Below, in pieces: positions 4,771-18,809 of a stretch of 64,000 nucleotides of DNA. A program made the position numbers and the translations under genes. The stretch spans positions 281,155-345,154 of IMG/VR virus record IMGVR_UViG_3300023184_000025. One strand, written 5' to 3'. Under the pieces are notes generated by a model that saw only the letters and a list, made by a program, of their open reading frames with translations, did not search any database and was not told the DNA's origin. How positions within the stretch are numbered: position 1 is the stretch's first letter; each line of letters starts with the position of its first letter.

Positions 4771-5670
4771 TTAAGCTACAAACGGAGTGTATTCAATACC
4801 TGTTGTGGCCAAGCCAACTAGGCCAATAGTGGTTTCAAATGCTGGCAACTCACTAGCAATAACTAGCACATCTGCTTGACTTAACTTGTTGTTGGTCATC
4901 CAAGTTGTGTATTCTGTTACTTGTGCCAATGTAGCTGTGCTACCAAATACGTTTTTATAAACTTGTTTAATAAATGTTTCATCACTAACACCGCCGGCGT
5001 CTGCTTTGTAAACATCAGTGGCCAACAATGCTGTGGCCAATTGTTTGTTTGTCCAGCCTGCGTCAGCAAGATAGATGCCAATGCCTTCATATGCTTTAGT
5101 AACATCTGCAACACCAAGTGCGGCTGCCAGCAATGCATATACATCGCCTGCGCGACCTGCGGCATCATAGGCAATGGCTTTGTTGGTGAACACCACACGC
5201 TCATGATCAGCAAGATTGAATTCCATGTTGCTAACTAATGCGCTTGCCAAAGTTACTTTGCTGGCAGTTTTAGTAATGGTATACTCTGTGCTAGCGCCAC
5301 CCATTGTGTAAGTGTCAACGCCAGCGGTACCCGTAACATCAACAACAATGTCAACAGTACCATCGCCAACACGACCCGTGCCCACCACACCAAATGTAGC
5401 GACTTTACCAGCAGTACCAACTGTGGCAACTGTGACAATCAAGTTGTTTGTACTTGTACCGCCCAACGCTGTGCCCGCAAGGGTGATTGTATCACCTGCC
5501 GCATAACCCGAGCCTGCACTGGCTACCAAGCTGTCAAGAACAACGGAGTATACCCCGTCAGTTTTGGTAACATCAAAAGCGGCGCCAGTGCCTGTACCTC
5601 CTGTTAACCCTGTAACATTTTGGTATGTGGCATTAACTGCTTTGTCTTTGATTGTGATTGTTGTTGTCAT
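4771..5670 (-). CDS. Thr/Gly/Ala-rich surface-type protein with C-terminal DUF4214-like (S-layer/RTX-associated) region
   Basis: HERVVFTNKAIAYD..GRAGDVY and SDETFIKQVYKNVFG resemble DUF4214-type C-termini; N-terminal GGTGTGA..GSGYAAGDTITL repeat. Confidence 0.55.
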   Translation of the reverse strand: MTTTITIKDKAVNATYQNVTGLTGGTGTGAAFDVTKTDGVYSVVLDSLVASAGSGYAAGDTITLAGTALGGTSTNNLIVTVATVGTAGKVATFGVVGTGRVGDGTVDIVVDVTGTAGVDTYTMGGASTEYTITKTASKVTLASALVSNMEFNLADHERVVFTNKAIAYDAAGRAGDVYALLAAALGVADVTKAYEGIGIYLADAGWTNKQLATALLATDVYKADAGGVSDETFIKQVYKNVFGSTATLAQVTEYTTWMTNNKLSQADVLVIASELPAFETTIGLVGLATTGIEYTPFVA

Positions 5671-5796
5671 TATTTTTCCTTATAAAATGAATATCAACTA
5701 GTATATAGCGTTTTTACTAAGAAGTCTAGAAAAGACCAACTGAACTTGTGCGTATGCGCACATGTTTGTCACGGAAAAATGATTTTTTGGCAAAAG

Positions 5797-6036
5797 TTAT
5801 CCGTAAAAATGCTTGTATAACATACCGGCTGTGTAAATGGTCAGCAATACAGCATTGGATGTGATCATTGATTTGTGTTTCATTCGTATGCTAACAGCCA
5901 ACCACAGTCCAGTTTCCAAAAAACACATGATTGCACCCAGCGGATAAAAGTCCAAAGAAACGCAGACAGCACCAACAATTGAAATTGTGGTAGCAGTCCA
6001 TTCAACTATTGCTTCTCTGTTCAGCTTCATACCCAA
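5797..6036 (-). CDS. small membrane protein (about 3 TM)
   Basis: Hydrophobic segments; promoter TTGACT-18bp-TATACT at 6039-6068. Confidence 0.65.
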   Translation of the reverse strand: MGMKLNREAIVEWTATTISIVGAVCVSLDFYPLGAIMCFLETGLWLAVSIRMKHKSMITSNAVLLTIYTAGMLYKHFYG

Positions 6037-6069
6037 CTAGTATAACACAGACAAGAATGCACAGTCAAG

Positions 6070-6099
6070 AAAAAGCCCACCAATTAGTGGGCTTGTTTT
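6070..6099. terminator. intrinsic terminator
   Basis: AAAAAGCCCAC-CAATTA-GTGGGCTTGTTTT. Confidence 0.75.
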
Positions 6100-6116
6100 A
6101 TCTAATCTACTAGAAA

Positions 6117-6671
6117 TTAGAAACTACGTGTGTAGAATACATTGTAACCATCTTGACGTGAATCACCGGTGATTCGGTCGAAACGGAAACCAACTGCATC
6201 CTTCTTGTTGATTGCATAAGTTACGCCAACACGAACTGTATCGGTGGTGTCTTTGTTTACATTGGCATTGTCTGCCGCTGTACGATAACGGTAAGCAACC
6301 TTAGCTGTCAAGCCAGAGCTCAATGGTACAGTAACACCTGGCTCAATTGAGTAGTATGTAAACTGACCGCTGGTGCTGTACTTTTGGCCCAATGCCACTT
6401 TAGCGTAGCCTTTAACTGGTCCAAACAATGTAGTAGTTGCAGTACCGCCAACTTCTAAACGTGTGCTAACTGAATTTGTGTTGTCAGTTTGCGTTGATGA
6501 AAGTTGTGTGTGTACACCAAATGTATCATTGATACTTTCACTTAGAGCGAAGTTGGTACTCATTTGGTCATTGCCACCGATGGTGTTTAATTTTGTGCCT
6601 TCTACAGTAACTGATCCGGCAAACGCTGTGCTACTAATTGCAATAGCAATAAATGCTAAGATTTTCTTCAT
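6117..6671 (-). CDS. outer-membrane beta-barrel (small porin, KdgM-like) protein
   Basis: Signal peptide MKKILAFIAIAISSTAFA, alternating amphipathic strands, C-terminal YTRSF. Confidence 0.75.
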   Translation of the reverse strand: MKKILAFIAIAISSTAFAGSVTVEGTKLNTIGGNDQMSTNFALSESINDTFGVHTQLSSTQTDNTNSVSTRLEVGGTATTTLFGPVKGYAKVALGQKYSTSGQFTYYSIEPGVTVPLSSGLTAKVAYRYRTAADNANVNKDTTDTVRVGVTYAINKKDAVGFRFDRITGDSRQDGYNVFYTRSF

Positions 6672-6768
6672 TTTTATTTTCCTTAAAAAAAGAATGAGTT
6701 TTAAATCATTCACTATTATGTATCAGTGTTTGCAACAATGTTAATTAAAATTGGGGGTATTTTGGTCC

Positions 6769-6792
6769 AAAAAAAACCCGCCGAAGCGGGTT
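6769..6792 (-). terminator. intrinsic terminator ending the tmRNA transcript
   Basis: AACCCGC-TTCG-GCGGGTT followed by a T run. Confidence 0.85.
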
Positions 6793-7064
6793 CTGAGTTT
6801 CTGTTACGAGGTATGTCTTACCCTAGACGGCTTTTATCAAGCTGCCAATGCGAACTGTTCGTCGTTTGCGTTTACGTTTTTTGCTTGATTTACGGTCATC
6901 GCCTACCGTGCTGTCCACTCTGTTACTCTTTGCCCTGTCAAAACCATGCTCACCCCCGACAAGAATATACTAACCTAGTATACTCTTGGTGGAAGTGCCG
7001 GGGCTCGAACCCGGGTCCAAGACAACTTTCTCTTCGCCTCTTCCCTTTCGGGGTTTACAGCAAT
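6793..7064 (-). ncRNA. ssrA: circularly permuted (two-piece) tmRNA; tag ANDEQFALAA
   Basis: T-arm and CACTTCCACCA (3' end 6987) come first, then a 29-nt hairpin spacer, then 5' GGGGGTG (6957) with G3:U70, then tag GCA AAC GAC GAA CAG TTC GCA TTG GCA GCT TGA TAA (6869-6837). Confidence 0.9.
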
Positions 7065-7068
7065 ATTC

Positions 7069-7701
7069 TTATTTAATCAATCTACGCTTTTGTAAATTCA
7101 ATTCTGCTATTTTAGCATCGTCTGGCTTTAGATAGTAATTCTTCTCACCATCGTTATACCAGTGTCTACCAAACGCATTGTTGTTTTTATTCTTGCGTAG
7201 TTGAGTCCATTCAATTGTTGTTATCCAACCTTCTGGAATTTGTTCTTTATTATACTTTTTGCGTGATGACAAGTCAACCGCATCTTTACCCACACACCAA
7301 ACTTTTCCAAACTGCGAATTGTTTTCTTTCTGTTGGTGTTGCTTTTCAGCAAAGGTCTTCTTACGCTTTTCCATTGCTGAGTCAGTGTTTGCCAAATCAC
7401 ACACCTTCTTTTGATGTTCTTTGTTTACAGAAAAATTGTGTTCAGTGCGAATACCTGTAAATGGATTTGGGTGTAGTTGATGACGCAACTTTCCCGCTTC
7501 TCGTTGTCTTATTCTTACTAATTCTTCTTTTGGGCTTAACTTTGCTAAACCCTGCCACGCAACATAATCTTGCCAACGACCATATTCTTCATATAACTTG
7601 CGATGTGCTTCTGCGTGGTCATCAACAGATAATTCTACAAGATTGCTTGGATCGTCTGTTCCGCCTGCGTGTTTAGGAATAATATGATGTTTGTGGCTCA
7701 T
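7069..7701 (-). CDS. free-standing HNH homing endonuclease with NUMOD-like C-terminal repeats
   Basis: HKHHIIPKHAGGTDDPSNLVELSVDDHAEAH HNH core; FGKVWC / IPEGW / FGRHWYNDG repeats; TATAAATA promoter 5 nt before ATG. Confidence 0.8.
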   Translation of the reverse strand: MSHKHHIIPKHAGGTDDPSNLVELSVDDHAEAHRKLYEEYGRWQDYVAWQGLAKLSPKEELVRIRQREAGKLRHQLHPNPFTGIRTEHNFSVNKEHQKKVCDLANTDSAMEKRKKTFAEKQHQQKENNSQFGKVWCVGKDAVDLSSRKKYNKEQIPEGWITTIEWTQLRKNKNNNAFGRHWYNDGEKNYYLKPDDAKIAELNLQKRRLIK

Positions 7702-7740
7702 ACAAGTATTTATACCTGTCGAACCAAAGTCCAGGATTAG

Positions 7741-8052
7741 TTAAATATTTCCTAATCCTACACGACTATAACCCAACTTGGATTTAATCTCTTTACGGTC
7801 TCGATTCTTCTCTGGTTTCCACGCCCGTGGGTCGACGGTTTCACCAGTTAGTTCATAACGAAAGTCTGGATCGTAAACCATATATCCCAGTTTGTTCCAT
7901 TTGATTACCCCATCGTCAAATAGAAAAATACAACCACGACACATACAGAAACTGGCACCGTTTTCACTCATTACATTACCATTCACCGTGCCAACATATT
8001 TGACCACATTACCCTGGTGCATTTCTTTAAGTGCTTCGTAGTAGTCAATCAT
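7741..8052 (-). CDS. hypothetical protein (103 aa)
   Basis: ORF overlapping the upstream gene by ATGA. Confidence 0.7.
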   Translation of the reverse strand: MIDYYEALKEMHQGNVVKYVGTVNGNVMSENGASFCMCRGCIFLFDDGVIKWNKLGYMVYDPDFRYELTGETVDPRAWKPEKNRDRKEIKSKLGYSRVGLGNI

Positions 8053-8279
8053 TCATCAACTCCAAAAACAAACTTGATACGATTGGCAACCACCTTGCCA
8101 TCATATCGGGTGTCGTTAGCAACATCTAAACATTCATTGATGATTAGTTCTGCGAATTTTTCTAAACGGATCTTATCCCATTCTTGAATTTTGAATCCAT
8201 CTTTGGGATCAAATTGGTATATCTTATCAGCAGATAAGTTAGCCTGTTCAGTAAGTTGTTTTATCTTCTGTTCGTTCAT
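8049..8279 (-). CDS. hypothetical protein (76 aa)
   Basis: ORF in operon context. Confidence 0.7.
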   Translation of the reverse strand: MNEQKIKQLTEQANLSADKIYQFDPKDGFKIQEWDKIRLEKFAELIINECLDVANDTRYDGKVVANRIKFVFGVDE

Positions 8280-8348
8280 AGTGGTCTTTGCGGTGTCCTA
8301 CCCTTGCGTCCAGAACACTTTTCTCTTTGCTTCATACAGCAATAACTC

Positions 8349-8993
8349 TTACTTATTGATTATACTGTCAACAAAGTCTAATAGCAATGCATAATGGCTA
8401 CCTTGATGATATTTGCCCTTCATCCAACTGTAACTATCATACCAATGCCGTTCACTTTCAGGATGACACCCTATTAATCCAATTTGGTTTTGAATTATGG
8501 CCATTGGATCACCATTGGCATAACGAGCAACAGTTTCGAACTTAGACTCGTCTCCAACTAAAGCGCACCCGTCATACCAAAACATGTTTGTGGGAGTGCC
8601 GTTCCAGGTTATACTGATATTTTTTGCATGCGGCCTGCGAGTATCAGTGTCAGGGCGTGTTATATACTGTACTGCATCAACGCCGTCTAGCAAATTAAAA
8701 TACTCACTGCCAGCCCAGTATGCACCCATACAGATACCAAGGTATGCTCCACCACGATTAACAAATTCCTGTATCCTAAGTCCGTTTTCTCTAGTTAAAA
8801 AATTAAAATTACTGGCATCTCCCAGACCACCGGGAAAACATATCATGTCAACATCGTCAAAAAAATCCGCCTCTAATTCCTGGCGGGTGAATATTTTAAA
8901 TGTGTAGTTTGACGAAAGGGCTTTAATGATACCGTTGCCACTTTGCACGGAGCAATATGGTTGGTGCAAAAATAATGCAATGCGACCGTTCAT
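8349..8993 (-). CDS. class I glutamine amidotransferase-like (BPL_N-type) protein
   Basis: FPGG, GGAYLGICMGAY nucleophile elbow, GCHPE. Confidence 0.75.
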   Translation of the reverse strand: MNGRIALFLHQPYCSVQSGNGIIKALSSNYTFKIFTRQELEADFFDDVDMICFPGGLGDASNFNFLTRENGLRIQEFVNRGGAYLGICMGAYWAGSEYFNLLDGVDAVQYITRPDTDTRRPHAKNISITWNGTPTNMFWYDGCALVGDESKFETVARYANGDPMAIIQNQIGLIGCHPESERHWYDSYSWMKGKYHQGSHYALLLDFVDSIINK

Positions 8994-8995
8994 GA

Positions 8996-9127
8996 TTATT
9001 TGTGTGGTTTTAAAAAGTCATCGTCTTTTGAATCTTCATCAAATTTGGACCAATCGTAGGTAGCAACTGAATATATCCAATATCCATACAGTCCAAAAAT
9101 TAAAATTAATAAAATTAGATTAGACAT
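8996..9127 (-). CDS. small single-pass membrane protein (43 aa)
   Basis: Manual translation MSNLILLILIFGLYGYWIYSVATYDW... Confidence 0.6.
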   Translation of the reverse strand: MSNLILLILIFGLYGYWIYSVATYDWSKFDEDSKDDDFLKPHK

Positions 9128-9141
9128 ACTACTCGAGATAT

Positions 9142-9654
9142 TTAGTCAACAGTTTTATTGACTGTTACCCCGGACTTTTCTAAAAATTTTACCCCTGAAT
9201 CATCTCGGTATGCTTCTCCGTAAAATACTCTGCGTATTCCGGATTGATAAATCAGTTTAGCGCATTCAATGCAGGGAGCATGAGTAACAAACAAATCAGC
9301 ACCGTCGCCACTTTCTGTGCTCTTGGCCAATTTTGCAATGGCGTTAGTTTCAGCATGAAGTACCTCTGGTTTAGTTTTTAATCCGTATCTATACTCTTCT
9401 TCAGCATCTTCGTTATATTCTGTATACGGATACATCGATTCAAACTCATCGGGACTAATCCATCCTCCTGCTCCAGAGTCATATACTTTATCTTCGCAAT
9501 TATTATCCCAACCAGCCGGCATACCATTGTAGCCAATTGAGATGATTCTATCATCCTTGACCACAATAGCACCCACATGCAATCTACGAGCATGACTAAG
9601 TTTGGCAAATGTTTTAGCAACATCCATATAGGCCTGAATAAATTTCTGTTTCAT
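9142..9654 (-). CDS. dCMP deaminase
   Basis: GYNG, HAETNAI and PCIECAK zinc motifs. Confidence 0.9.
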   Translation of the reverse strand: MKQKFIQAYMDVAKTFAKLSHARRLHVGAIVVKDDRIISIGYNGMPAGWDNNCEDKVYDSGAGGWISPDEFESMYPYTEYNEDAEEEYRYGLKTKPEVLHAETNAIAKLAKSTESGDGADLFVTHAPCIECAKLIYQSGIRRVFYGEAYRDDSGVKFLEKSGVTVNKTVD

Positions 9655-12453: not shown

Positions 12454-12528
12454 TGGCCGGTCCTGAGAGGATCGAACTCCCACCCTCTGTTTCGAAGACA
12501 GAGATGATATCCATTTCACCAAGGACCG
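12454..12528 (-). tRNA. tRNA-Arg(UCG)
   Basis: Cloverleaf, anticodon loop CTTCGAA, CCA encoded. Confidence 0.85.
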
Positions 12529-12531
12529 ATG

Positions 12532-12605
12532 TGGTGCTCTCAACAAGAATTGAACTTGTGTTTCGCCCTTACCAAGGGCGTGTAATGCCATTATACTATG
12601 AGAGC
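12532..12605 (-). tRNA. tRNA-Thr(GGU)
   Basis: Cloverleaf, loop TTGGTAA, CCA. Confidence 0.9.
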
Positions 12606-12646
12606 AGAATTTGTAATATTGATAAAGTTTTAATGTAAATAAAAAC

Positions 12647-13372
12647 ATGCCTAATTATGATTCCTTTTATAAAAATCTTGCTAACAAAACTGTAGACTGG
12701 TTGCCCATGGACACTGAAGAATTATACAAGAAAAATCTTGACAAACGCCACGGTGATCTAGTACTACAGGGCTGGATAGATAATCACTTTACATATGAAT
12801 TTAACTCACATGGGTTTAGGTGTAAAGAGTTTACCGACAAACCTAGTATCATGTTTCTTGGATGTAGTTTTACAATGGGTATGGGATTACCTGTAGACTT
12901 AATTTGGCCTGAGTTAGTATCAAAGAATCTAAATTTACAATGTGTTAATCTTGGCATTGCCGGCTCCTCTGCTGATACAGCATTTAGGTTATGCCATGGA
13001 TGGCTAGATAAAATTAATCCAAACACAGTTATTTTTATGCAACCCCCGGGCATAAGATGTGAACTGGTAACCGACGATAGTATTAAAAATGTAGATATTG
13101 AAGATCCATCAACAAAAGAGTTTATCAAACTTTGGACAGTAGACGAAAATAATAATTATTTCAACACTGAAAAAAATACATTAGGTATACAAATGCTGTG
13201 TACTGCCAAAGGAATCAAGTTTGTTACAGTTAATGCTAACACACTCACATCAAGCTACTCTAATTCATTTGGTAGAGACCTTTGCCATCCGGGCATTGAC
13301 AGGCATCGAGTTTTTGCTGAACGATTGTCAATGAAGCTTGGAGCGGGTAGAGAGAATCGAACTCTCAACTAA
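12647..13372 (+). CDS. SGNH/GDSL-like hydrolase/acyltransferase-type protein
   Basis: FLGCSFTMG, NLGIAGSS, DLCHPG; TAAATA 5 nt upstream; 3' end overlaps tRNA-Gly antisense. Confidence 0.65.
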   Translation: MPNYDSFYKNLANKTVDWLPMDTEELYKKNLDKRHGDLVLQGWIDNHFTYEFNSHGFRCKEFTDKPSIMFLGCSFTMGMGLPVDLIWPELVSKNLNLQCVNLGIAGSSADTAFRLCHGWLDKINPNTVIFMQPPGIRCELVTDDSIKNVDIEDPSTKEFIKLWTVDENNNYFNTEKNTLGIQMLCTAKGIKFVTVNANTLTSSYSNSFGRDLCHPGIDRHRVFAERLSMKLGAGRENRTLN

Positions 13373-13412
13373 ACCTTGGCAAGGTCTCGGGTTACCATTA
13401 CACCATACCCGC
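13339..13412 (-). tRNA. tRNA-Gly(GCC)
   Basis: Cloverleaf, loop TTGCCAA, CCA. Confidence 0.9.
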
Positions 13413-13422
13413 ATTAAATAAC

Positions 13423-13893
13423 TCAAGCTACTTTTAAAGTTTTGAAACGATCAGCGGCATAGCTTGCGGCAAATGCGTTGGGTTTAACAAACGGTACAAC
13501 ATTACATGTTCCTTTAATATAGCCAATAGCCTGGCTAATAACACAGCTAGATCCATACTGATCATCAGGGTTAATGTCCAAGTGGACTTGAACCTGTCTA
13601 CCTTCAAATACATCTGCTAGCTTTAGGTACAACTCGCTAACTTTATACACTTCGGACATGAGGCGCATTGCTGGCCTATTGACTTTGTGATCGTAATCAC
13701 GTTCACGTTGTACCTCACCAAATAACTTACAACCGTTATTTCCGTTAATGTGTACAACAATAGCCAAGACGTAGTCAGCATACCACTGACCGTCAACACG
13801 CATACGTTCAGAATCACAGCCTAGATAAATTTTAGTATCTGGCCCTTGCGCTTCAATAAAGCTCTTGATTTCTTCTAGATTAATTTTTTTCAT
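13423..13893 (-). CDS. RNase H-like YkuK/DUF458 family protein
   Basis: IYLGCDS, VHLDIN, VKPNAFAASYAAD. Confidence 0.75.
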   Translation of the reverse strand: MKKINLEEIKSFIEAQGPDTKIYLGCDSERMRVDGQWYADYVLAIVVHINGNNGCKLFGEVQRERDYDHKVNRPAMRLMSEVYKVSELYLKLADVFEGRQVQVHLDINPDDQYGSSCVISQAIGYIKGTCNVVPFVKPNAFAASYAADRFKTLKVA

Positions 13894-13904
13894 GATTACC
13901 TCAG

Positions 13905-14684
13905 TTACGAGCTGGCATCAAGTACATGACTATACATGATGTCCTTTACTGTAGCAGTCCTTTCATTTTTGTTTTTGCTTCCCAATACCACAATCACGTA
14001 GTCTTTGTCTTTTTGTGTCACAAACAAACTCATACACCAACCTGCGGCATTGGTAAGACCAGTTTTGCTAATCACAATGTTGTTAAATTCAAACAACAAT
14101 GGTTGATTGGTATTGGTTAAGTTTACAATTTGAGATTTTTTCTTGACCTGTGTTTCAATTGAAACAGTTTTCTTAACTGATGCTTCTTTAATAAACCAAT
14201 AGCCGGATGCTGTTTGCACCATGTTGGCCACGTCATATACTGTGCTTACATTAAACACACTTAGGCCAGTTGGGTCAATAAATGCAGTATTATTCATTCC
14301 CCACACTTTGGCATGTAGGTTCATTTGTTTAACAAATTCGCTTCTTCCACCAGGATAATCTTCAGCAATAGTTTCGGCCGCGGCGTTGTCACTGCGAACT
14401 AGCATTGCATTTAACAGTTCGTATCTGGTGTAATATTGTCGTGGAATACTACTTGGAACACGACCACTAAGTAAAAGTTTTCTACCTAGGTCTTTGTTGT
14501 AGTCAAGTGTGACCATTGCGGTCATTAATTTAGTAATACTAGCAATAGGACGAATTTCTTCACCGTTGTGTACATATTGTGGTTTGTTGGAGACCACATC
14601 CAAGACTAATATACTTGAATCACTAGGAAATGCATAAGTGGGTATGCTAACCAGCATTGCAAGCATTATAAAAAGTCTCTTCAT
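13905..14684 (-). CDS. D-alanyl-D-alanine carboxy/endopeptidase (peptidase S11, PBP7-like)
   Basis: Signal peptide; SITK, SDN and KTG penicillin-binding motifs. Confidence 0.9.
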   Translation of the reverse strand: MKRLFIMLAMLVSIPTYAFPSDSSILVLDVVSNKPQYVHNGEEIRPIASITKLMTAMVTLDYNKDLGRKLLLSGRVPSSIPRQYYTRYELLNAMLVRSDNAAAETIAEDYPGGRSEFVKQMNLHAKVWGMNNTAFIDPTGLSVFNVSTVYDVANMVQTASGYWFIKEASVKKTVSIETQVKKKSQIVNLTNTNQPLLFEFNNIVISKTGLTNAAGWCMSLFVTQKDKDYVIVVLGSKNKNERTATVKDIMYSHVLDASS

Positions 14685-14717
14685 GATGCTTCCTTTGTTC
14701 TATTATATATGCTAAAT

Positions 14718-14794
14718 TGGTGCCCCAGAGGAGACTCGAACTCCTAAAATTTGGCTTCTAAGACCAACACGTATACCAATTCCGTCACCGGGGC
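14718..14794 (-). tRNA. tRNA-Leu(UAG) with short variable loop
   Basis: TTGGT-CTTAGAA-GCCAA then only ATTTT before the T-stem; CCA. Confidence 0.85.
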
Positions 14795-14957
14795 TTTAAA
14801 TACAGTATGATTAATTGTAACACATCTACTGATATATTGTATGAGAAATTGGCAAAACAGTCTTATATTTCTCCAACTTACCATAGCACACATCGTGTGT
14901 TTGTTCCTGATCCACTGCTGAATACACCCAAACCTAAGTTTATTCCTGATCCATTAT

Positions 14958-15033
14958 TGGTACCAAGAGACGGGATCGAACCGTCCACACCCGGATTTTC
15001 AGTCCGGTGCTCTACCAACTGAGCTATCTTGGC
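14958..15033 (-). tRNA. tRNA-Phe(GAA)
   Basis: Canonical cloverleaf, CCA. Confidence 0.95.
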
Positions 15034-15035
15034 AT

Positions 15036-15111
15036 TGGGGTAACTAATGGGAATCGAACCCATATTAACGGAATCACAATCCGTGGTGTTAACCTTTACA
15101 CTATAGTCACC
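15036..15111 (-). tRNA. tRNA-His(GUG)
   Basis: G-1 present, loop TTGTGAT, CCA. Confidence 0.92.
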
Positions 15112-15116
15112 ATAGA

Positions 15117-15401
15117 TTAATCTTGGTCAGGCGGTAATCCATTACTGCGTCGATCACGAAGAGTATCAGTGTTCTGAAACATTCGTTTCTCTTGCTGTGT
15201 CAACTCTTTAAACGTTTTCCTGGGATTACCGCACATTACACAATTTGGGTTGCCACAGTTCATAGCATGATGCTTGGCAAACTTATGTGGTTCTTCAACT
15301 GGTATCCCAAATTCTTTGGCAATCTTTACCTGCTTGTTAATAGCATTATCATCTTTAAGCAATCGCTTGCTATGTTTGAATTTATCGTTTTCGTCTGACA
15401 T
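15117..15401 (-). CDS. hypothetical basic protein with HH..C..C..C motif
   Basis: KHHAMNCGNPNCVMCGNPRK; GGAG RBS. Confidence 0.7.
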   Translation of the reverse strand: MSDENDKFKHSKRLLKDDNAINKQVKIAKEFGIPVEEPHKFAKHHAMNCGNPNCVMCGNPRKTFKELTQQEKRMFQNTDTLRDRRSNGLPPDQD

Positions 15402-15415
15402 TGAATACTCCTATA

Positions 15416-15505
15416 TGGTGGAAGCGGTGAGATTCGAACTCACGGACCCTTGCGAGCCGACAGTTTTCAAGACTGTTGCCATAAACCTGACTCGACCACA
15501 CTTCC
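15416..15505 (-). tRNA. tRNA-Ser(UGA)
   Basis: Long variable arm, loop CTTGAAA, CCA. Confidence 0.92.
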
Positions 15506-15508
15506 TGA

Positions 15509-15946
15509 TTATTCTACTTCAGGGGCAGGTTTAACTTTCCCCCATTCAATAAAATTAAATACTCTCTCTACAATAAAGAAAAAAGTCATATTTGTCAATG
15601 CCTGTGCTATTGCAAATAGCACAGCGTCGGACCCACTGCTTTTAATAATGAATATGGCTATGAGATATCCAACAAACATAGTTATTGCACGATAGATAAT
15701 GGTTTTAATTACACTACGTTTGATATTGTCAACTCCTGAATTGTTTCTTGCCCAACCAGTAAGCAACCACAACCTGTCATGCACATAATAAATTGCTGTG
15801 CCTACTACAATTATAATTAAGCCAACCATACCAGCTGACGACATGCTGGCGCCAACCAGCAGTGATAACAACATGGCAGCTACCACAGAGAAAAATCTGT
15901 ATATAACTGCTTTTACTATTGTTCTTGTTTGTGTTTCTTTTATCAT
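15509..15946 (-). CDS. DUF2061-type membrane protein (tandem duplicated unit)
   Basis: Two R(T/S)(I/V)(V/I)K..IYR repeats with TM helices and HDRLW / ERVF ends. Confidence 0.65.
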   Translation of the reverse strand: MIKETQTRTIVKAVIYRFFSVVAAMLLSLLVGASMSSAGMVGLIIIVVGTAIYYVHDRLWLLTGWARNNSGVDNIKRSVIKTIIYRAITMFVGYLIAIFIIKSSGSDAVLFAIAQALTNMTFFFIVERVFNFIEWGKVKPAPEVE

Positions 15947-15968
15947 ATTACTTCCTTATATTTAATAC

Positions 15969-16042
15969 TGGCGTACCCACTAGGACTCGAACCTAGACTG
16001 ACGGTTTTGGAGACCGCGATGCTGCCATTACACTATGGATAC
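15969..16042 (-). tRNA. tRNA-Trp(CCA)
   Basis: Loop CTCCAAA, CCA. Confidence 0.9.
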
Positions 16043-16046
16043 AAAT

Positions 16047-16124
16047 TGGAACAACGGGTGAGATTTGAACTCACGACTTTACGGATTTGCAATCCGTTGC
16101 TTTTGACCACTCAGCCACCGTTGC
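16047..16124 (-). tRNA. tRNA-Cys(GCA)
   Basis: Loop TTGCAAA, U73, CCA. Confidence 0.9.
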
Positions 16125-16129
16125 ATAAT

Positions 16130-16206
16130 TGGTCGGAATAGTAGGATTCGAACCTACGACCTCCTGGTCCCAAACCAGGCGCACTACCAGGCTGTGCTAC
16201 ACTCCG
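16130..16206 (-). tRNA. tRNA-Pro(UGG)
   Basis: Loop TTTGGGA, CCA. Confidence 0.93.
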
Positions 16207-16212
16207 AATAAC

Positions 16213-16287
16213 TGGTGGGTGATGAGAGGATCGAACTCCCGACAAACTGCGTGTAAGGCAGCGACTCTACCGCTGAGCTAATCACCC
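16213..16287 (-). tRNA. tRNA-Val(UAC)
   Basis: Loop CTTACAC, CCA. Confidence 0.92.
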
Positions 16288-16293
16288 TAAACA

Positions 16294-16367
16294 TGGAGCG
16301 GGGTAAGAGAATCGAACTCTCAGCATTAGCTTGGAAGGCTAAGGTATTACCACTATACGAACCCCGC
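16294..16367 (-). tRNA. tRNA-Gly(UCC)
   Basis: Loop CTTCCAA, CCA. Confidence 0.92.
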
Positions 16368-16385
16368 ATTGTAATTTACTTATAT

Positions 16386-16460
16386 TGGTAGCCATGGACA
16401 GTTTCGAAATGTCGACCCCGACCTTATCAAGATCGTGCTCTTCCTCTGAGCTACACGGCT
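16386..16460 (-). tRNA. tRNA-Ile(GAU)
   Basis: Loop TTGATAA; T-stem has one mismatch; CCA. Confidence 0.85.
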
Positions 16461-16466
16461 AAAATC

Positions 16467-16543
16467 TGGCAGGAGATATAGGATTCGAACCTATGCGTGT
16501 CGGAATCAAAATCCGATGCCTTAACCAACTTGGCGAATCTCCA
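16467..16543 (-). tRNA. tRNA-Gln(UUG)
   Basis: Loop TTTTGAT, U1:U72 mismatch, CCA. Confidence 0.9.
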
Positions 16544-16551
16544 ACAAAGCC

Positions 16552-16627
16552 TGGTGGTAATGGCTGGACTCGAACCAGCGATAGACTGCGTATGAAGCAG
16601 TTGCATTGGCCACTATGCTACATTACC
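16552..16627 (-). tRNA. tRNA with CAU anticodon (elongator Met, or Ile2)
   Basis: Loop TTCATAC, CCA. Confidence 0.85.
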
Positions 16628-16742
16628 ATATAGAGGCACTCTCAACAGCAGGCCTAGGAGGCAATCTGGTTGCTGAAACTTTTGCATCTGCAGATACTCA
16701 GTTTCTTCTCCTGCTTTGACTTACGCCAAGAATGCTTTTATA

Positions 16743-16818
16743 TGGTAGGACGTATTGGATTCGAACCAATGACCAATAGATTAAAAGTCTACTGCTCTAC
16801 CAACTGAGCTAACGTCCC
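16743..16818 (-). tRNA. tRNA-Lys(UUU)
   Basis: Loop CTTTTAA, CCA. Confidence 0.95.
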
Positions 16819-16869
16819 ACTAATCTTCTCACTCTTATCACTGTCCATGTGGACTCTCCTTAAAAACTA

Positions 16870-16945
16870 TGGTGGAGGATACAGGGATCGAACCTGCGAC
16901 CTACTGGTTGCAAACCAGTCGCTCTCCCAACTGAGCTAATCCCCC
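16870..16945 (-). tRNA. tRNA-Ala(UGC)
   Basis: G3:U70, loop TTTGCAA, CCA. Confidence 0.95.
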
Positions 16946-16951
16946 AAATAC

Positions 16952-17028
16952 TGGTACCACCTGAGCGAGTTGAACGCCCTACCCCCAAGTTCGTAGCCTG
17001 GTGCTCTATCCAAATGAGCTAAGGTGGT
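16952..17028 (-). tRNA. tRNA-Arg(ACG)
   Basis: Loop CTACGAA, CCA. Confidence 0.9.
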
Positions 17029-17034
17029 ATAAAA

Positions 17035-17110
<76 letters not shown>

Positions 17111-17115
17111 TTGTT

Positions 17116-17191
17116 TGGCTCCTCGACCTGGGCTCGAACCAGGGACAACTTGATTAACAGTCAAGTGCTCTACCAACTGAGCTATCAAGGA
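17116..17191 (-). tRNA. tRNA-Asn(GUU)
   Basis: Loop CTGTTAA, CCA. Confidence 0.95.
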
Positions 17192-17380
17192 ATAAAATAG
17201 TTAACACACTCCGAGGAATGTGTGTATTAAAGCACTCTAAAATACTTAGGCTGCCTGTTCTTAAAGAATGCTTTAATACGCTGTAATTTTTCCCTACACA
17301 AGAGTAGTTCCATCCTACAGGCCGCCCATTTGCCCATGTTTAGAGTGCAGGCTAGGATCTCGTTTCCTATAACACTTTGG

Positions 17381-17554
17381 CTAATTTACACTAAACGTTG
17401 ACAATTTGGTCAACGCTTCGTGATGTTTTCTAGCACGTTCAAACTTATCTTGAATAAGTTTTTGAAGCTGTTCTTTGGACATCTCTCCGAGAGCAGTTTC
17501 ATAAGCTTGTTCTACGATTCGTTCGTTTAATTTTTTGTAATCTATCTGTTTCAT
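17381..17554 (-). CDS. small helical hypothetical protein (57 aa, MKQIDYKKLNERIVEQ...)
   Basis: Manual translation; AAGGAAAA RBS; first gene after the attenuator terminator. Confidence 0.65.
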   Translation of the reverse strand: MKQIDYKKLNERIVEQAYETALGEMSKEQLQKLIQDKFERARKHHEALTKLSTFSVN

Positions 17555-17570
17555 TTTTTCCTTTGTAAAA

Positions 17571-17604
17571 ACAAAAAACCCCAGGGTGTTTAGTCCTAGG
17601 GTCC
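17571..17604 (-). terminator. attenuator terminator B
   Basis: GGACCCTAGG-ACTAAACAC-CCTGGGG-TTTTTTGTTTT. Confidence 0.75.
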
Positions 17605-17627
17605 TTTTAGAATTTGATGTATTTTTA

Positions 17628-17759
17628 TTACATCTTGTCTCCTACGGACCCTTGATTTTCTGGAATTGTAATTGCACAGTTAAAATTAAAACCGCGTGAC
17701 CAGGCAGATGCTGTCTGGAGCATAACGGGTTTTAACGATAACATGTAATGTTTGTTCAT
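17628..17759 (-). CDS. putative leader peptide B (43 aa, contains all 20 amino acids)
   Basis: MNKHYMLSLKPVMLQTASAWSRGFNFNCAITIPENQGSVGDKM; carries AGGGTCC complementary to the terminator arm. Confidence 0.6.
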   Translation of the reverse strand: MNKHYMLSLKPVMLQTASAWSRGFNFNCAITIPENQGSVGDKM

Positions 17760-17769
17760 CTTAGTTTCT

Positions 17770-17798
17770 ATTGTACTTTATTTATATCTTAAAGTCAA
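17770..17798 (-). promoter_or_regulatory. composite promoter: sigma70 with an embedded T4-late-type TATAAATA
   Basis: TTGACT-ttaagaTATAAATAaag-TACAAT (17 bp spacer). Confidence 0.75.
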
Positions 17799-17845
17799 CC
17801 TTTAAGGTAAAAATGTTGTGTTGTATAGATACAACACTCCTGAGT

Positions 17846-17920
17846 TGGTTGCGGGGGAAGGATTCGAACCTCCGTCTTCCGGGTTATGAGCCCGATAGTC
17901 TACCACTGACGTACCCCGCG
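17846..17920 (-). tRNA. initiator tRNA-fMet(CAU)
   Basis: C1:A72 mismatch, GGG/CCC in the anticodon stem, CCA. Confidence 0.92.
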
Positions 17921-17942
17921 GTAAAAGTTAGAGTTTTTATAT

Positions 17943-18018
17943 TGGCGGTCTTAGGGGGTAACGATCCCCACTCTTACGGCGTGACAAGCCGTCGTGCGTC
18001 CATGAACACTTTAAGACC
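17943..18018 (-). tRNA. tRNA-Asp(GUC), atypical T-loop
   Basis: Loop TTGTCAC; T-loop ATCGTTA; CCA. Confidence 0.85.
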
Positions 18019-18025
18019 AAATTTT

Positions 18026-18170
18026 TATAGTCAAGCACCGAGTATGCCAATTTAGGAGTCCGGTGCTTCCGTTCCAAAGCCGATGCAGTTATATCAGGAT
18101 CCGCCTCCGGCCGATGGGACCCGAATAGTGTATGCGTCCATACACGATACCTTATCGATGCTTGACTATA
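18026..18170 (-). ncRNA. candidate stem-closed RNA cassette
   Basis: 16-bp closing helix TATAGTCAAGCATCGA/TCGGTGCTTGACTATA; inner GTGTATG-GACG-CATACAC hairpin. Confidence 0.55.
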
Positions 18171-18261
18171 AAAACATATTGAAACACACTAACTACCTTG
18201 GTATGTACTAAAGTTCATAGAACCGCTACGACCCTATCTTTAATGTGCTTCAATATGCTCT

Positions 18262-18454
18262 GCATCCCCCGGCGGTAATTATAGAGTATCAAGATACGAC
18301 GCTATCGTACCCATCACACACTCCTTCCACCCGCTTCCCGACAGGGACCGTTCTCGCATTGCTAGCGGCCTTTTGGTTCGAAGACTACCACCCGTACATG
18401 TCACTGTACTTCTCATCGTGTGGGTCACACTATCCGGAGACACCCGGAACGTTC
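18262..18454 (-). ncRNA. candidate GC-rich multi-helix RNA directly 3' of tRNA-Tyr
   Basis: At least five helices (TCCGG/CCGGA, GTACA/TGTAC, CCGCT/AGCGG, TACGA/TCGTA, GGTGGTAGT/ATTACCGCC). Confidence 0.55.
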
Positions 18455-18541
18455 TGGTGGATGAGGTTGGACTTGAACCAACAATGCCATTACGACGGAA
18501 GATTTACAGTCTCCTGGGGTTACCAATTTTCCTACACATCC
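18455..18541 (-). tRNA. tRNA-Tyr(GUA)
   Basis: Long variable arm, loop CTGTAAA, CCA. Confidence 0.92.
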
Positions 18542-18734: not shown

Positions 18735-18809
18735 TGGTACTGGGTACGGGAATCGAACCCGTCTTACAAACGTGAAAGGCTTGTGTCCTAACCGATAGAC
18801 GAACCCAGC
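18735..18809 (-). tRNA. tRNA-Glu(UUC)
   Basis: Loop CTTTCAC, CCA. Confidence 0.92.

What the first reader, a model, noticed from the sequence alone, without database searches (positions are those of the whole stretch)
6793..7075. Phage-encoded circularly permuted two-piece tmRNA
Seen: the order is acceptor piece (T-arm, G3:U70 stem half, CCA at 6987), then a perfect spacer hairpin AAGAGTATACTA-GGT-TAGTATATTCTT, then the coding piece starting GGGGGTG (6957), the tag ANDEQFALAA with tandem stops, and a terminator. A TAAATA promoter lies at 7070-7075. Known: two-piece tmRNAs occur in Alphaproteobacteria, some cyanobacteria and a betaproteobacterial lineage, and the LAA end is a ClpXP degron. Inference: the gene was either captured from a two-piece betaproteobacterial host (a host clue) or permuted independently in the phage. 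It is very compact (about 245 nt) and smpB is not in this window.
Basis: partly seen in the sequence, partly recalled or inferred. Interest (0 to 1): 0.75.

Follow-up and report, generated by a model that had tools for sequence, protein, structure and literature searches.

The report
Jumbo-phage two-piece tmRNA with homing-endonuclease scar
A 345-kb freshwater jumbo phage carries a genuine two-piece (circularly permuted) ribosome-rescue RNA of a type already known from phages, and next to it sits a homing-endonuclease gene and the stump of a second, replaced copy, suggesting that such genes are swapped between phages by a selfish nuclease.

Summary
Window 7063-6769 (- strand) is a circularly permuted tmRNA gene. 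ARAGORN calls it permuted with tag ANDEQFALAA**. Rfam gives beta_tmRNA 120 bits (cut-off 84) and tmRNA_permuted 112 bits (cut-off 47). Covariation in 31 relatives supports the fold, and the G3.U70 pair is invariant.

The window is the end of a 345-kb T4-superfamily jumbo phage from freshwater. The phage has 28 tRNAs and no SmpB, integrase or RNase P RNA.

The gene is homologous to the betaproteobacterial two-piece type, so it was not permuted independently. But it lies in a large phage-only clade, and the closest bacterial gene found is about 72% identical. Architecture alone is therefore a weak host clue. The size, about 266 nt mature, is ordinary for this type. Phage and huge-phage two-piece tmRNAs are already published, so this is a new member of a known kind.

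One result is new. The gene directly upstream is an HNH homing endonuclease. A 38-nt stump, 100% identical to the common phage tmRNA allele, lies 1.3 kb upstream and ends at the T-arm. At least 21 of 33 relatives of this HNH sit beside a permuted tmRNA. Truncated stumps occur only beside the HNH (15/0 against 3/62). This fits endonuclease-driven replacement of tmRNA alleles, which remains untested.

The parts
7070..7075 (-). TAAATA promoter-like motif. It is a degenerate T4-type late-promoter core, 13 nt upstream of the conserved TGCTGTA start.
   Evidence: Read directly. The same motif occurs at a fixed 13-14 nt offset in 31 of 44 occurrences across 95 distinct phage tmRNA leaders, with 1.5% background. 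TATAAATA is promoter-like genome-wide: 9 of 12 copies lie within 60 nt upstream of an ORF start.
6987..7063 (-). Acceptor piece, about 77 nt. It holds P2a strand GCUGU 7061-7057, branch hairpin CCCC-GAAA-GGG 7053-7043, P2b strand UUGUCUU 7025-7019, T-arm 7014-6998, acceptor 3' strand 6997-6991, A73 6990 and CCA 6989-6987.
   Evidence: ARAGORN 3' tRNA domain. Rfam alignments. Covariation: P2a 97%, P2b 82%, T-arm 99% and acceptor 100% of cells paired. Coordinates.
6958..6986 (-). Intervening spacer, 29 nt, which would be removed on maturation. Together with the A of CCA it forms a 12-bp hairpin (6987-6961).
   Evidence: Read directly. The hairpin is conserved with many compensatory changes across relatives: helices 5 and 6 are 87-91% paired.
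6769..6957 (-). Coding piece, up to 189 nt. It holds acceptor 5' strand GGGGGUG 6957-6951, the D-loop analogue GGUUUUGAC 6945-6937, P2b partner 6936-6930, P2a partner 6914-6910, P3/PK1 hairpin 6909-6892, the tag ORF, post-tag hairpin 6824-6809, conserved CGUAACAGAA 6808-6799 and terminator 6792-6769.
   Evidence: ARAGORN 5' tRNA domain and resume consensus. Rfam. Covariation. Coordinates.
6834..6869 (-). Tag reading frame: resume codon GCA, peptide ANDEQFALAA, tandem stops TGA TAA.
   Evidence: ARAGORN. This is the most frequent tag among 70 related phage tmRNAs. It is identical to the tag of standard tmRNAs in two Burkholderiales genomes.
7069..7701 (-). HNH homing-endonuclease gene, 210 aa. 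Its stop codon overlaps the TAAATA motif, 6 nt before the tmRNA start.
   Evidence: Pfam HNH, E 2.6e-5. PHROG 655 'homing endonuclease', E 3.4e-11. At least 21 of 33 IMG/VR relatives lie beside a permuted tmRNA.
7741..8279 (-). Two small ORFs of unknown function (103 aa at 7741-8052 and 76 aa at 8049-8279). They lie between the tmRNA stump and the HNH gene and form part of the inserted cassette.
   Evidence: ORF list. No Pfam or PHROG match. The 103-aa ORF travels with the HNH gene in L173, L177 and L200-L203.
8306..8357 (-). Stump of a second tmRNA gene. It comprises the leader plus the acceptor-piece 5' part (TTATTGCTGTATGAAGCAAAGAGAAAAGTGTTCTGGACG) and ends where the T-stem should begin.
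   Evidence: Alignment A1. It is the best non-self match in the whole genome, scoring 21.75 against a next-best 16.5, z about 8. It is 100% identical over 38 nt to the L019-group tmRNA, E 2.6e-13. The same stump lies beside HNH genes in 15 distinct contexts and never without one.

Best explanation
Window 7063-6769 (- strand) is an intact gene for a two-piece, circularly permuted tmRNA of the betaproteobacterial structural type. It is carried by a lytic-type, T4-superfamily jumbo phage from freshwater.

Proposed mechanism:
1. A precursor of about 295 nt is transcribed from a T4-late-type TAAATA promoter, and possibly also by read-through from the HNH gene. Transcription ends at the intrinsic terminator.
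2. The acceptor stem, extended coaxially by the 12-bp spacer hairpin, presents tRNA-like ends.
3. Host RNase P cuts 5' of G6957, and host 3' processing trims to the encoded CCA at 6987.
4. This leaves a 77-nt acceptor piece and a coding piece of about 185 nt, held together by the acceptor stem and helices P2a and P2b.
5. Host AlaRS charges the RNA through G3.U70 and A73.
6. With host SmpB and EF-Tu it enters stalled ribosomes and resumes translation at GCA. It appends ANDEQFALAA, which sends the product to host ClpXP-type proteases.
7. The likely benefit is to keep ribosomes free late in infection, when host mRNA decay produces many non-stop complexes and host ssrA may be shut off.

Shown here: gene identity, the fold with covariation, the tag, the promoter and terminator motifs, and the absence of phage smpB, RNase P RNA and integrase.

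Inferred, not shown: transcription, processing into two pieces, charging, tagging, and the benefit to the phage.

The gene belongs to a large phage-borne clade. It appears to spread between phages with an adjacent HNH homing endonuclease that replaced a resident allele and left a 5' stump at 8357-8306.
For: Detection: ARAGORN calls a permuted tmRNA. RF01850 scores 120.4 bits against a cut-off of 84, and RF04321 scores 111.8 against 47.

Structure under selection: on 31 relatives, 52 modelled pairs are 87.7% paired, against 44-47% when the partners are slid. Thirty-nine pairs show compensatory changes, and 0 of 500 shuffles reach the observed values. G3.U70 is invariant in 31 of 31.

Tag: the frame is conserved as ANDxxFALAA-like across the clade.

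Promoter: the motif sits at a fixed offset in relatives and TATAAATA behaves as a promoter genome-wide. The terminator was read directly.

Phage identity: gp23 capsid at 333 bits, T4-like DNA polymerase closest to the Phosso, Atu_ph07, XaC1 and CBB jumbo phages, CheckV 99% complete, 28 tRNAs.

Absent from the genome: SmpB, tyrosine integrase, RNase P RNA.

Clade: the tree is phage-only around the window. More than 120 IMG/VR contigs carry the related allele.

Literature: two-piece tmRNAs with few pseudoknots tag efficiently, and PK1 can be replaced by a hairpin (PMC3968760).

RNA libraries: in the freshwater metatranscriptome run X15, contigs identical to the neighbouring ORFs are present. Summed word depth over the tmRNA is 28-76, against 0-8 on the flanks.
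Against: - No experiment and no read-level end mapping is available. The RNA-library contigs over the tmRNA come largely from relatives, and DNA carry-over cannot be excluded.
- The host, and so the compatibility of its SmpB, AlaRS and RNase P, is unknown.
- The window has U at 6940 where at least 90% of relatives have C in the GGUUUCGAC motif, and it has a second G.U at 4:69.
- The second stem of PK1 is only weakly supported, at 74% paired.
- The second stem of the post-tag pseudoknot seen in relatives seems to be missing here.
- The Rfam beta score of 120 is far below that of native bacterial genes, 169-296.
- MFE folding alone does not recover the T-arm.
Confidence: 0.8

Rival explanations
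1. The tmRNA is a recently captured host gene, so it identifies the host as a member of the classical two-piece betaproteobacterial lineage.
For: The best-scoring Rfam model is beta_tmRNA. The tag ANDEQFALAA is of the Burkholderiales kind and is identical to tags in two sampled genomes, although those are one-piece genes. DLP_6's gene clusters with permuted copies in Stenotrophomonas chromosomes, so some host-phage exchange does occur.
Against: The closest bacterial gene among 401 sampled Burkholderiales is 72% identical, while phage relatives are 75-95% identical. Only 4 of 151 sampled genomes have a beta-type gene over the cut-off, and these score 169-296 bits against 120 here. The same type occurs in phages and genomes of lineages whose main ssrA is one-piece. 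More than 120 viral contigs share the clade's allele.
Confidence: 0.1
2. The RNA is a decoy or inhibitor rather than a rescue factor. It would titrate host SmpB, AlaRS or ribosomes to shut down host trans-translation, as proposed for the TLD-only RNA of mycobacteriophage DS6A.
For: No phage SmpB is encoded. The pseudoknot complement is reduced, and there is a U at the conserved C6940. A precedent for an inhibitory TLD-only phage RNA is cited in PMC4131195.
Against: A full messenger domain is kept. The resume codon, a canonical ALAA degron and tandem stops are conserved across dozens of diverged relatives. A pure decoy would not need these.
Confidence: 0.07
3. The tmRNA gene is mainly a passenger or immunity allele of the selfish HNH cassette and gives the phage no benefit. 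It persists because the endonuclease drives it.
For: It is tightly linked to the HNH gene (6 nt apart). HNH relatives sit beside tmRNA genes in at least 21 of 33 loci. The stump shows that an earlier allele was replaced.
Against: HNH-free phages keep intact tmRNA genes in large numbers: more than 120 contigs, and 0 of 80 examined have the HNH. The structure shows strong purifying and compensatory evolution. The gene is therefore maintained independently of the endonuclease.
Confidence: 0.08
4. The permutation arose independently within phages and has converged on the bacterial beta type.
For: The phage clade is distinct from native bacterial clades in the tree.
Against: Beyond gene order, the phage and bacterial genes share sequence in the P3 loop, the GGUUUCGAC-AGGG segment, the resume context UAAAyGCAAAYGA and the post-tag GGG...CCU(C/U)GUAAC region. 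The RF01850 match runs end to end over positions 1-331.
Confidence: 0.03
5. The tmRNA-like sequence is an attachment site or a leftover from integration into a host ssrA gene.
For: ssrA is a common integration target (PMC4383910, PMC11915505). A partial tmRNA fragment is present at 8357-8306.
Against: The gene is complete, not a 3' fragment. There is no tyrosine integrase in the 345-kb genome. The partial fragment is a 5' piece that matches phage alleles, not bacterial ones, and it is linked to an HNH gene.
Confidence: 0.02

Closest known systems
Betaproteobacterial two-piece tmRNA (Rfam RF01850 beta_tmRNA; Sharkady & Williams 2004, cited in PMC9004378 and PMC3968760)
   Same: The gene order is acceptor piece, short spacer, coding piece. 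Also shared are the encoded CCA, G3.U70, a bipartite P2, the P3 hairpin with an AGGCGA-type loop, a 10-residue AND..F/YA.AA tag and a post-tag GGG/CCU helix. The CM match runs end to end above the cut-off.
   Different: It is encoded by a phage and sits in a phage-only clade. It scores 120 bits against 169-296 for native genes. It has an extra GNRA-capped branch hairpin in P2 (7053-7043). The second stem of the post-tag pseudoknot appears lost. It carries a T4-late-type rather than a sigma-70 promoter motif.
Published phage-encoded two-piece tmRNAs: OM43 phage Melnitz, pelagimyophages, cyanophages, and Stenotrophomonas phages Mendera and Moby in Table S1 (Buchholz et al. 2022, PMC9004378)
   Same: These are permuted ssrA genes in large myoviruses that lack smpB. 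They are found with ARAGORN and were proposed to maintain hijacked translation or to tag proteins.
   Different: Melnitz-type genes are alphaproteobacterial in type, marine, and fused to a glutamine riboswitch. This one is beta-type, from freshwater, has no riboswitch, and is linked to an HNH homing endonuclease and a stump of a replaced allele.
tmRNAs of huge phages (Al-Shayeb et al. 2020, PMC7162821)
   Same: The genome is over 200 kb with many tRNAs and a tmRNA as part of a translation-support gene set.
   Different: Some of those phages also encode SmpB. This one does not.
Free-standing homing endonucleases in phage tRNA gene regions (T4 SegB, T5 F-Tfl HNH enzymes: my own recollection, not checked here), and group I introns in the tmRNA T-loop (PMC11915505)
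   Same: A selfish nuclease gene lies beside or within a tRNA-like gene. The breakpoints of the stumps fall in the T-stem or T-loop, the region where tmRNA introns insert.
   Different: No intron is detectable. Instead, a partial 5' duplicate of the target is left behind and a complete, sequence-diverged tmRNA gene follows the endonuclease gene. I found no description of this arrangement for tmRNA.
TLD-only tmRNA of mycobacteriophage DS6A (PMC4131195)
   Same: It is a phage-encoded tmRNA relative without a phage SmpB.
   Different: DS6A lacks the messenger domain. Here the tag frame is complete and conserved.

Membership tests
tmRNA, permuted (two-piece) form | Covariance-model score above the curated cut-off | tested here: met
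   RF04321 scores 111.8 bits against 47, and RF01850 scores 120.4 bits against 84, both matching end to end.
tmRNA, permuted (two-piece) form | Gene order: 3' tRNA-like half with CCA, then an intervening segment, then the 5' tRNA-like half and the tag ORF | tested here: met
   ARAGORN reports 'Permuted', with the 3' domain before the 5' domain.
tmRNA, permuted (two-piece) form | Alanine identity: a 7-bp acceptor stem with G3.U70, discriminator A73 and a CCA end | tested here: met
   GGGGGUG pairs with CACUUCC, with A6990 and CCA 6989-6987. The G.U pair is invariant in 31 of 31 relatives.
tmRNA, permuted (two-piece) form | A T-arm with a TPsiC-type loop, and a P2 helix joining the two pieces, supported by covariation | tested here: met
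   Cells paired: T-arm 99%, P2a 97%, P2b 82%, with compensatory changes in 13 of 17 pairs.
tmRNA, permuted (two-piece) form | A tag ORF that starts at an Ala resume codon, ends in a hydrophobic ALAA-type degron, and is followed by a stop | tested here: met
   GCA...GCU UGA UAA encodes ANDEQFALAA.
tmRNA, permuted (two-piece) form | Pseudoknot PK1 upstream of the resume codon | tested here: inconclusive
   The P3 hairpin is supported at about 79% paired. The proposed second stem is 74% paired with few compensatory changes. A hairpin can substitute for PK1 (PMC3968760).
tmRNA, permuted (two-piece) form | Processing into two RNAs, alanylation, SmpB binding and tagging activity | not testable with these tools
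   Only assembled contigs of RNA libraries were available, and they are dominated by relatives.
tmRNA-SmpB system | A dedicated SmpB partner encoded in the same genome | tested here: not met
   There is no PF01668 match at E<=1 in the 345-kb genome. The control search matched 12 of the 14 control genomes, 10 of them over the cut-off. The RNA must rely on host SmpB.
Native betaproteobacterial two-piece lineage (as a host-derived gene) | Falls phylogenetically within bacterial beta-type genes and has a close bacterial relative | tested here: not met
   The surrounding clade is phage-only: window+L174 at 98 and +L190 at 96 SH-aLRT support. The best bacterial identity is 72%.
Free-standing HNH homing endonuclease targeting the tmRNA gene | HNH nuclease motif | tested here: met
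   Pfam PF01844, E 2.6e-5. PHROG 655 'homing endonuclease', E 3.4e-11.
Free-standing HNH homing endonuclease targeting the tmRNA gene | Recurrent linkage to the presumed target gene in different genomes | tested here: met
   At least 21 of 33 HNH relatives lie beside a permuted tmRNA, in either orientation. The figure is 4 of 80 for the other flanking gene.
Free-standing HNH homing endonuclease targeting the tmRNA gene | Endonuclease-linked alleles differ from endonuclease-free alleles at the presumed target, and there are scars at a common site | tested here: met
   The common 30-mer allele occurs in more than 120 contigs, and 0 of 80 examined have the HNH. None of the HNH loci has that intact 30-mer. 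Truncated stumps: 15 with the HNH and 0 without. Intact segments: 3 with and 62 without. Fisher p 1e-13, with an ascertainment caveat. Breakpoints lie within about 12 nt in the T-stem or T-loop.
Free-standing HNH homing endonuclease targeting the tmRNA gene | Site-specific cleavage of the endonuclease-free allele and resistance of the linked allele | not testable with these tools
   This needs an in vitro cleavage assay or a co-infection assay.
Group I intron-interrupted tmRNA | A group I intron between the two halves of the T-loop | tested here: not met
   No intron family matched in the window at 5500-9500 or in 11 HNH loci at E<=0.01 to 1. The downstream tmRNA gene is complete in itself.

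The most novel reading that the evidence does not exclude
A family of HNH homing endonucleases uses the phage tmRNA gene as its homing site. It would cut the common allele in the T-stem or T-loop. Repair would then install the endonuclease gene together with a diverged, cleavage-resistant but functional tmRNA allele. The truncated 5' part of the old allele would be left as a scar, and possibly as a homology arm for further spread. If so, an endonuclease arms race drives both the horizontal movement and the sequence diversification of tmRNA among freshwater jumbo phages. Target duplication would serve here in place of an intron as the way to keep an essential RNA gene intact.
Probability: 0.5. 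Interest if true: 0.65.

Novelty: new member of a known kind. Interest (0 to 1): 0.5.

Why it matters
On its own, the tmRNA adds one more, well-supported example to the catalogue of phage-encoded two-piece tmRNAs. It also shows that the beta-type form is very common in freshwater phages: hundreds of IMG/VR contigs carry it, while the curated tmRNA database lists only 79 phage sequences.

It warns against reading host taxonomy from tmRNA architecture. The tag sequence may be the better clue.

The linked HNH gene and the stump give a concrete, testable model for how a structured, essential RNA gene can be a homing target without an intron. The model could explain why phage tmRNA alleles are so mosaic. 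It also offers candidate site-specific nucleases with a defined target of about 30 bp.

Tried and rejected
- **Group I intron behind the T-loop breakpoints:** no Rfam intron match in the window or in 11 HNH loci.
- **attP or integration remnant:** no integrase in the genome.
- **Phage-encoded RNase P RNA for processing:** none found. A sub-threshold RNase P-like match exists in phage DLP_6 only.
- **Sigma-70 promoter:** the strong-looking TTGACT-17-TATAAT at 7277-7249 lies inside the HNH ORF, and the number of such sites equals the shuffle expectation. I do not rely on it.
- **The stump keeping a working promoter for the cassette:** its TAAATA core has decayed to TCAATAAG, so this is not supported.
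- **An 'empty site' relative**, meaning the same flanking 214-aa gene followed by an uninterrupted tmRNA: none of 80 relatives had that arrangement. Synteny around the tmRNA is not conserved.
- **Plain BLAST** missed the stump because of a 14-nt indel. A gap-tolerant local alignment and the comparison with L019 found it.
- **MFE folding** of the two pieces or of the precursor recovers the acceptor stem and the spacer hairpin but not the T-arm. I used the comparative model instead.
- **RNA evidence:** the only data were assembled contigs. Over the tmRNA they come mostly from relatives' conserved coding piece, so neither transcription nor the processing sites could be shown.
- **Host identification:** DNA polymerase is at most 51% identical to any isolate.
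- **Prophage origin of the extra Stenotrophomonas copies:** not supported. They sit beside a conserved histidine-kinase gene in two species.
Full report
**1. The observation**

Read on the - strand, window 7085-6760 contains, in order:
- a TAAATA motif (7075-7070);
- a strand GCUGU (7061-7057);
- a small CCCC-GAAA-GGG hairpin (7053-7043);
- UUGUCUU (7025-7019);
- a T-arm CCGGG/UUCGAGC/CCCGG (7014-6998);
- the acceptor 3' strand CACUUCC, then A, then CCA (6997-6987);
- a 29-nt spacer that, with the last A of CCA, forms a 12-bp hairpin (6987-6961, one G.U pair);
- the acceptor 5' strand GGGGGUG (6957-6951);
- the partners of the two upstream strands (AGGGCAA 6936-6930 and ACAGC 6914-6910);
- a hairpin ACGGU-AGGCGAUG-ACCGU (6909-6892);
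- the frame GCA AAC GAC GAA CAG UUC GCA UUG GCA GCU UGA UAA (6869-6834);
- a short hairpin (6824-6809);
- a G+C-rich terminator hairpin with a U8 tail (6792-6769).

ARAGORN reports a permuted tmRNA with tag ANDEQFALAA**. Rfam gives beta_tmRNA 120.4 bits (cut-off 84, E 4e-36) and tmRNA_permuted 111.8 bits (cut-off 47), both end to end.

**2. What genome this is**

- The window is bases 281,155-345,154 of a 345,154-bp IMG/VR virus record rated 99% complete, with 40.3% G+C.
- All 28 tRNA genes and the tmRNA lie in this window.
- It encodes a T4 gp23-type capsid protein at 333 bits.
- Its family-B DNA polymerase has its best matches, at 42-51% identity, in the Sinorhizobium phage Phosso, Agrobacterium phage Atu_ph07, Xanthomonas XaC1 and Pectobacterium CBB group of jumbo myoviruses.
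- It also encodes a GroEL-like chaperonin.
- The stretch around the tmRNA is held by several lake and freshwater metagenomes and by some wastewater ones.
- The whole genome has no SmpB, no tyrosine integrase and no RNase P RNA.

This is therefore a lytic-type jumbo phage that must rely on host factors to process and use the RNA.

**3. Is the RNA under selection as a tmRNA?**

I collected relatives in three ways: a structural DNA pattern scanned over viral contigs (54 loci, every one called a permuted tmRNA by ARAGORN), the same pattern over bacterial genomes, and the neighbouring HNH gene.

An alignment of 31 sequences (A3) gave an RNAalifold consensus containing P2b, the T-arm, the acceptor stem and the base of the spacer hairpin. 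Seventeen of its 24 pairs showed compensatory change.

A fuller hand-drawn model of 52 pairs is 87.7% paired, against 44-47% when the 3' partners are slid by 1-3 columns. Thirty-nine pairs show changes on both sides, and 0 of 500 shuffles reach any observed measure. Per helix:
- acceptor stem 100% paired, with the G3.U70 pair invariant in 31 of 31;
- T-arm 99%;
- P2a 97%;
- P2b 82%;
- spacer hairpin 87-91%;
- P3 hairpin about 79%;
- first stem of the post-tag pseudoknot 93%;
- proposed second stem of PK1 only 74%.

In several relatives (L019, L201, L044, L007, L180) the loop of the post-tag hairpin pairs with a downstream segment, for example GGUGGG with CCCACC. The window's loop is short and has no such partner, so that pseudoknot appears reduced to a hairpin.

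The branch hairpin in P2 keeps a GNRA loop with a covarying stem in L173, L174, L190 and L199.

Two features are unusual. The window has U at 6940 where at least 90% of rows have C (GGUUUCGAC), and it has a second G.U at 4:69. An independent assembly, L172, is identical, so these are not sequencing errors.

Reduced pseudoknots are compatible with function. Two-piece tmRNAs with few pseudoknots tag efficiently, and PK1 can be replaced by a hairpin (PMC3968760).

**4. Promoter and size**

TAAATA occurs within 40 nt upstream of the conserved TGNTGTA start in 43 of 95 distinct phage tmRNA leaders, against 1.5% of random 40-mers. Thirty-one of the 44 occurrences lie at offset 13-14, and the window's is at 13.

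The full T4-late consensus TATAAATA is rare in this genome, with 12 copies. Nine of them lie within 60 nt upstream of an ORF start on the same strand, compared with 3-6% for random positions.

The sigma-70-like site inside the HNH ORF is no more than chance would give.

The mature pieces would be about 77 nt and up to 189 nt. That is normal for the beta type, whose Rfam model has 331 positions including the leader and spacer.

**5. Where the gene comes from**

The gene is homologous to the betaproteobacterial two-piece type. Beyond the gene order, it shares the P3 loop, the GGUUUCGAC-AGGG segment, the resume context and the post-tag GGG...CCUYGUAAC region with Azoarcus and Gallionellaceae sequences. 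Independent permutation is therefore very unlikely.

It is not a recent capture either.
- In a maximum-likelihood tree of 81 permuted tmRNAs, the window groups with L174 (98) and L190 (96) inside a phage-only group that also holds L019, L173 and L180. Native Azoarcus-type genes form a separate clade (99). The sequences are short, so deep branches are weak.
- BLAST of the window's gene against 401 sampled genomes of the order that contains Azoarcus found at best 72% identity over about 190 nt, in three small, low-G+C genomes with tags ANDESYALAA and ANDENFALAA.
- RF01850 passes its cut-off in only 4 of 151 sampled genomes. Those score 169-296 bits, against 91-149 for the phage genes.

The two-piece architecture is also not confined to hosts that use it.
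- Stenotrophomonas phage DLP_6 has an unannotated permuted tmRNA scoring 136.8 bits with RF04321. Related Stenotrophomonas phages are listed as 'Permuted' in Table S1 of Buchholz et al..
- The Stenotrophomonas, Herbaspirillum and Gallionellaceae genomes that hold a permuted copy also hold a full standard ssrA, at 191-226 bits.
- In the Gallionellaceae MAG the two genes are 283 nt apart.
- The Stenotrophomonas permuted copies cluster with DLP_6 (99) but sit in a conserved chromosomal context. The direction of transfer is therefore open.

Tags seem to track hosts better than architecture does. DLP_6's ANDDSFAPMAIAA resembles the Stenotrophomonas standard tag ANDDNYAPVALAA. ANDEQFALAA is identical to the tag of standard tmRNAs in two sampled Burkholderiales genomes. 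This weakly favours a betaproteobacterial host, through the tag and not through the permutation.

**6. The neighbouring homing endonuclease and the stump of a second tmRNA gene**

This part was found in passing and then followed up.

The ORF that ends 6 nt before the tmRNA (7701-7069) is an HNH protein (Pfam) that matches PHROG 655 'homing endonuclease'.

Laying contigs from RNA and DNA runs showed joints between about 6946 and about 8306-8313. That led me to 8357-8306. There the sequence repeats the leader and the first 45 nt or so of the acceptor piece, then breaks off where the T-stem should begin.
- It is the best non-self match to that query in the whole genome on either strand, scoring 21.75 against a next-best 16.5.
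- It is 100% identical over 38 nt to the tmRNA of the L019 group of viral contigs (E 2.6e-13). The window's intact gene is only 74.6% identical to that tmRNA.
- Two small ORFs and the HNH gene lie between the stump and the intact gene.

The pattern is general.
- Of 33 IMG/VR loci found with the HNH protein (42-100% identity), 19 by ARAGORN plus 2 more by Rfam have a beta-type permuted tmRNA directly beside the HNH gene. It lies either downstream on the same strand or divergently. Only 4 of 80 loci found with the other flanking gene have one.
- The same stump, 95-100% identical, recurs upstream of the HNH gene and the intact tmRNA.
- There are three junction classes within about 12 nt of one another: GGAC|, GGACGC| and GGACGCGGGTTCGAYT|. 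The last breaks in the T-loop.
None of 80 such loci has the HNH within 3 kb, including 0 of 30 with ample flanks.
- None of the HNH loci contains that intact 30-mer.
- Over all viral loci fetched, truncated stumps number 15 with the HNH nearby and 0 without. Intact fragment-type segments number 3 with and 62 without. Fisher p is 1.2e-13. The loci were ascertained in different ways, so the p-value overstates the case. However, no truncated stump was seen in any of the 214 loci that were not selected through the HNH.
- No group I intron is present.

The simplest reading is intron-less homing. The nuclease would cut the common allele in the T-arm. Repair from an HNH-bearing donor would install the HNH gene plus a diverged, presumably resistant, complete tmRNA gene, and leave the old 5' part behind. 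Cleavage itself is untested. I found no published description of such an association.

**7. Function**

The most likely function is ribosome rescue during infection, using host SmpB, EF-Tu, AlaRS, RNase P and ClpXP.
- Shown: the gene, its fold, the conserved tag and the expression signals.
- Inferred: processing, charging, tagging and the benefit to the phage.
- A decoy role is less likely because the messenger domain is conserved.
- A purely selfish-passenger role is unlikely because HNH-free phages keep the gene in large numbers.

RNA-library contigs are compatible with expression. In run X15, pieces identical to the neighbouring ORFs are present, and summed depth over the tmRNA is higher than on the flanks. 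This proves nothing, because relatives contribute to the depth and DNA carry-over is possible.

**8. Novelty**

Phage-encoded tmRNAs, including two-piece ones and those of huge phages, are published (PMC4131195, PMC9004378, PMC7162821, PMC11915505). The finding as stated is therefore a new member of a known kind, and its 'host clue' inference is weak. The added value lies in two things: the size of the freshwater phage clade, and the HNH and stump association, which is a testable and apparently undescribed mode of tmRNA gene turnover.

Noticed in passing
window 8306-8357 (-), with 7741-8279 and 7069-7701: A 5' stump of a second tmRNA gene is 100% identical over 38 nt to a common phage allele. 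It is separated from the intact gene by two small ORFs and an HNH homing-endonuclease gene. The same arrangement recurs in many IMG/VR contigs.
   Followed up: yes
window 12454-19024 and 26597-26838 (-): Twenty-eight tRNA genes, all on the - strand, lie in two clusters covering nearly all amino acids. They are the only tRNAs in the 345-kb genome.
   Followed up: no
window 6117-6713 (-): The ORF directly downstream of the tmRNA has a signal peptide and a C-terminal ...YTRSF, like an outer-membrane beta-barrel protein. It has no Pfam or PHROG match. Homologues lie next to the tmRNA in L042, L049 and L190-L193, so this gene pair is partly syntenic.
   Followed up: partly
window 6940 (-): The window has U where at least 90% of 31 relatives have C in the near-invariant GGUUUCGAC (D-loop analogue) motif. 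The independent assembly L172 is identical.
   Followed up: no
window 6919-6926 and 6800-6807 (-): The octamer GUAACAGA occurs twice in the coding piece, once in the P2 internal loop and once after the tag. Both copies are conserved in relatives. No pairing partner or role was found.
   Followed up: no
L002 (KU682439.2, about 102,846-103,236) and L002 16-264: Stenotrophomonas phage DLP_6 has an unannotated beta-type permuted tmRNA (tag ANDDSFAPMAIAA) within its tRNA array. It also has a sub-threshold match to bacterial RNase P RNA (54.7 bits, cut-off 100) next to the array.
   Followed up: partly
L206 (G001:C56, 1501-1870 and 2153-2484); L061, L065, L066, L207, L208: Gallionellaceae, Stenotrophomonas and Herbaspirillum genomes carry both a standard ssrA and a permuted tmRNA. 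The permuted copies have unusual tags, for example ...AYGT and ...HQVLKAA. In the Gallionellaceae MAG the two genes are 283 nt apart. In Stenotrophomonas the permuted copy sits beside a conserved HWE/PAS histidine kinase gene.
   Followed up: partly
whole genome G000: TATAAATA is under-represented, with 12 copies against about 22 expected. Nine of the 12 lie within 60 nt upstream of an ORF start, consistent with T4-type late promoters in this Rak2/Atu_ph07-like phage.
   Followed up: partly
window 22969-24588, 39874-41754, 8349-8993 (-): The window also encodes a GroEL-type chaperonin, a B12-binding radical-SAM protein and a BPL_N/GATase-like protein. The last has more than 590 relatives in IMG/VR.
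   Followed up: no
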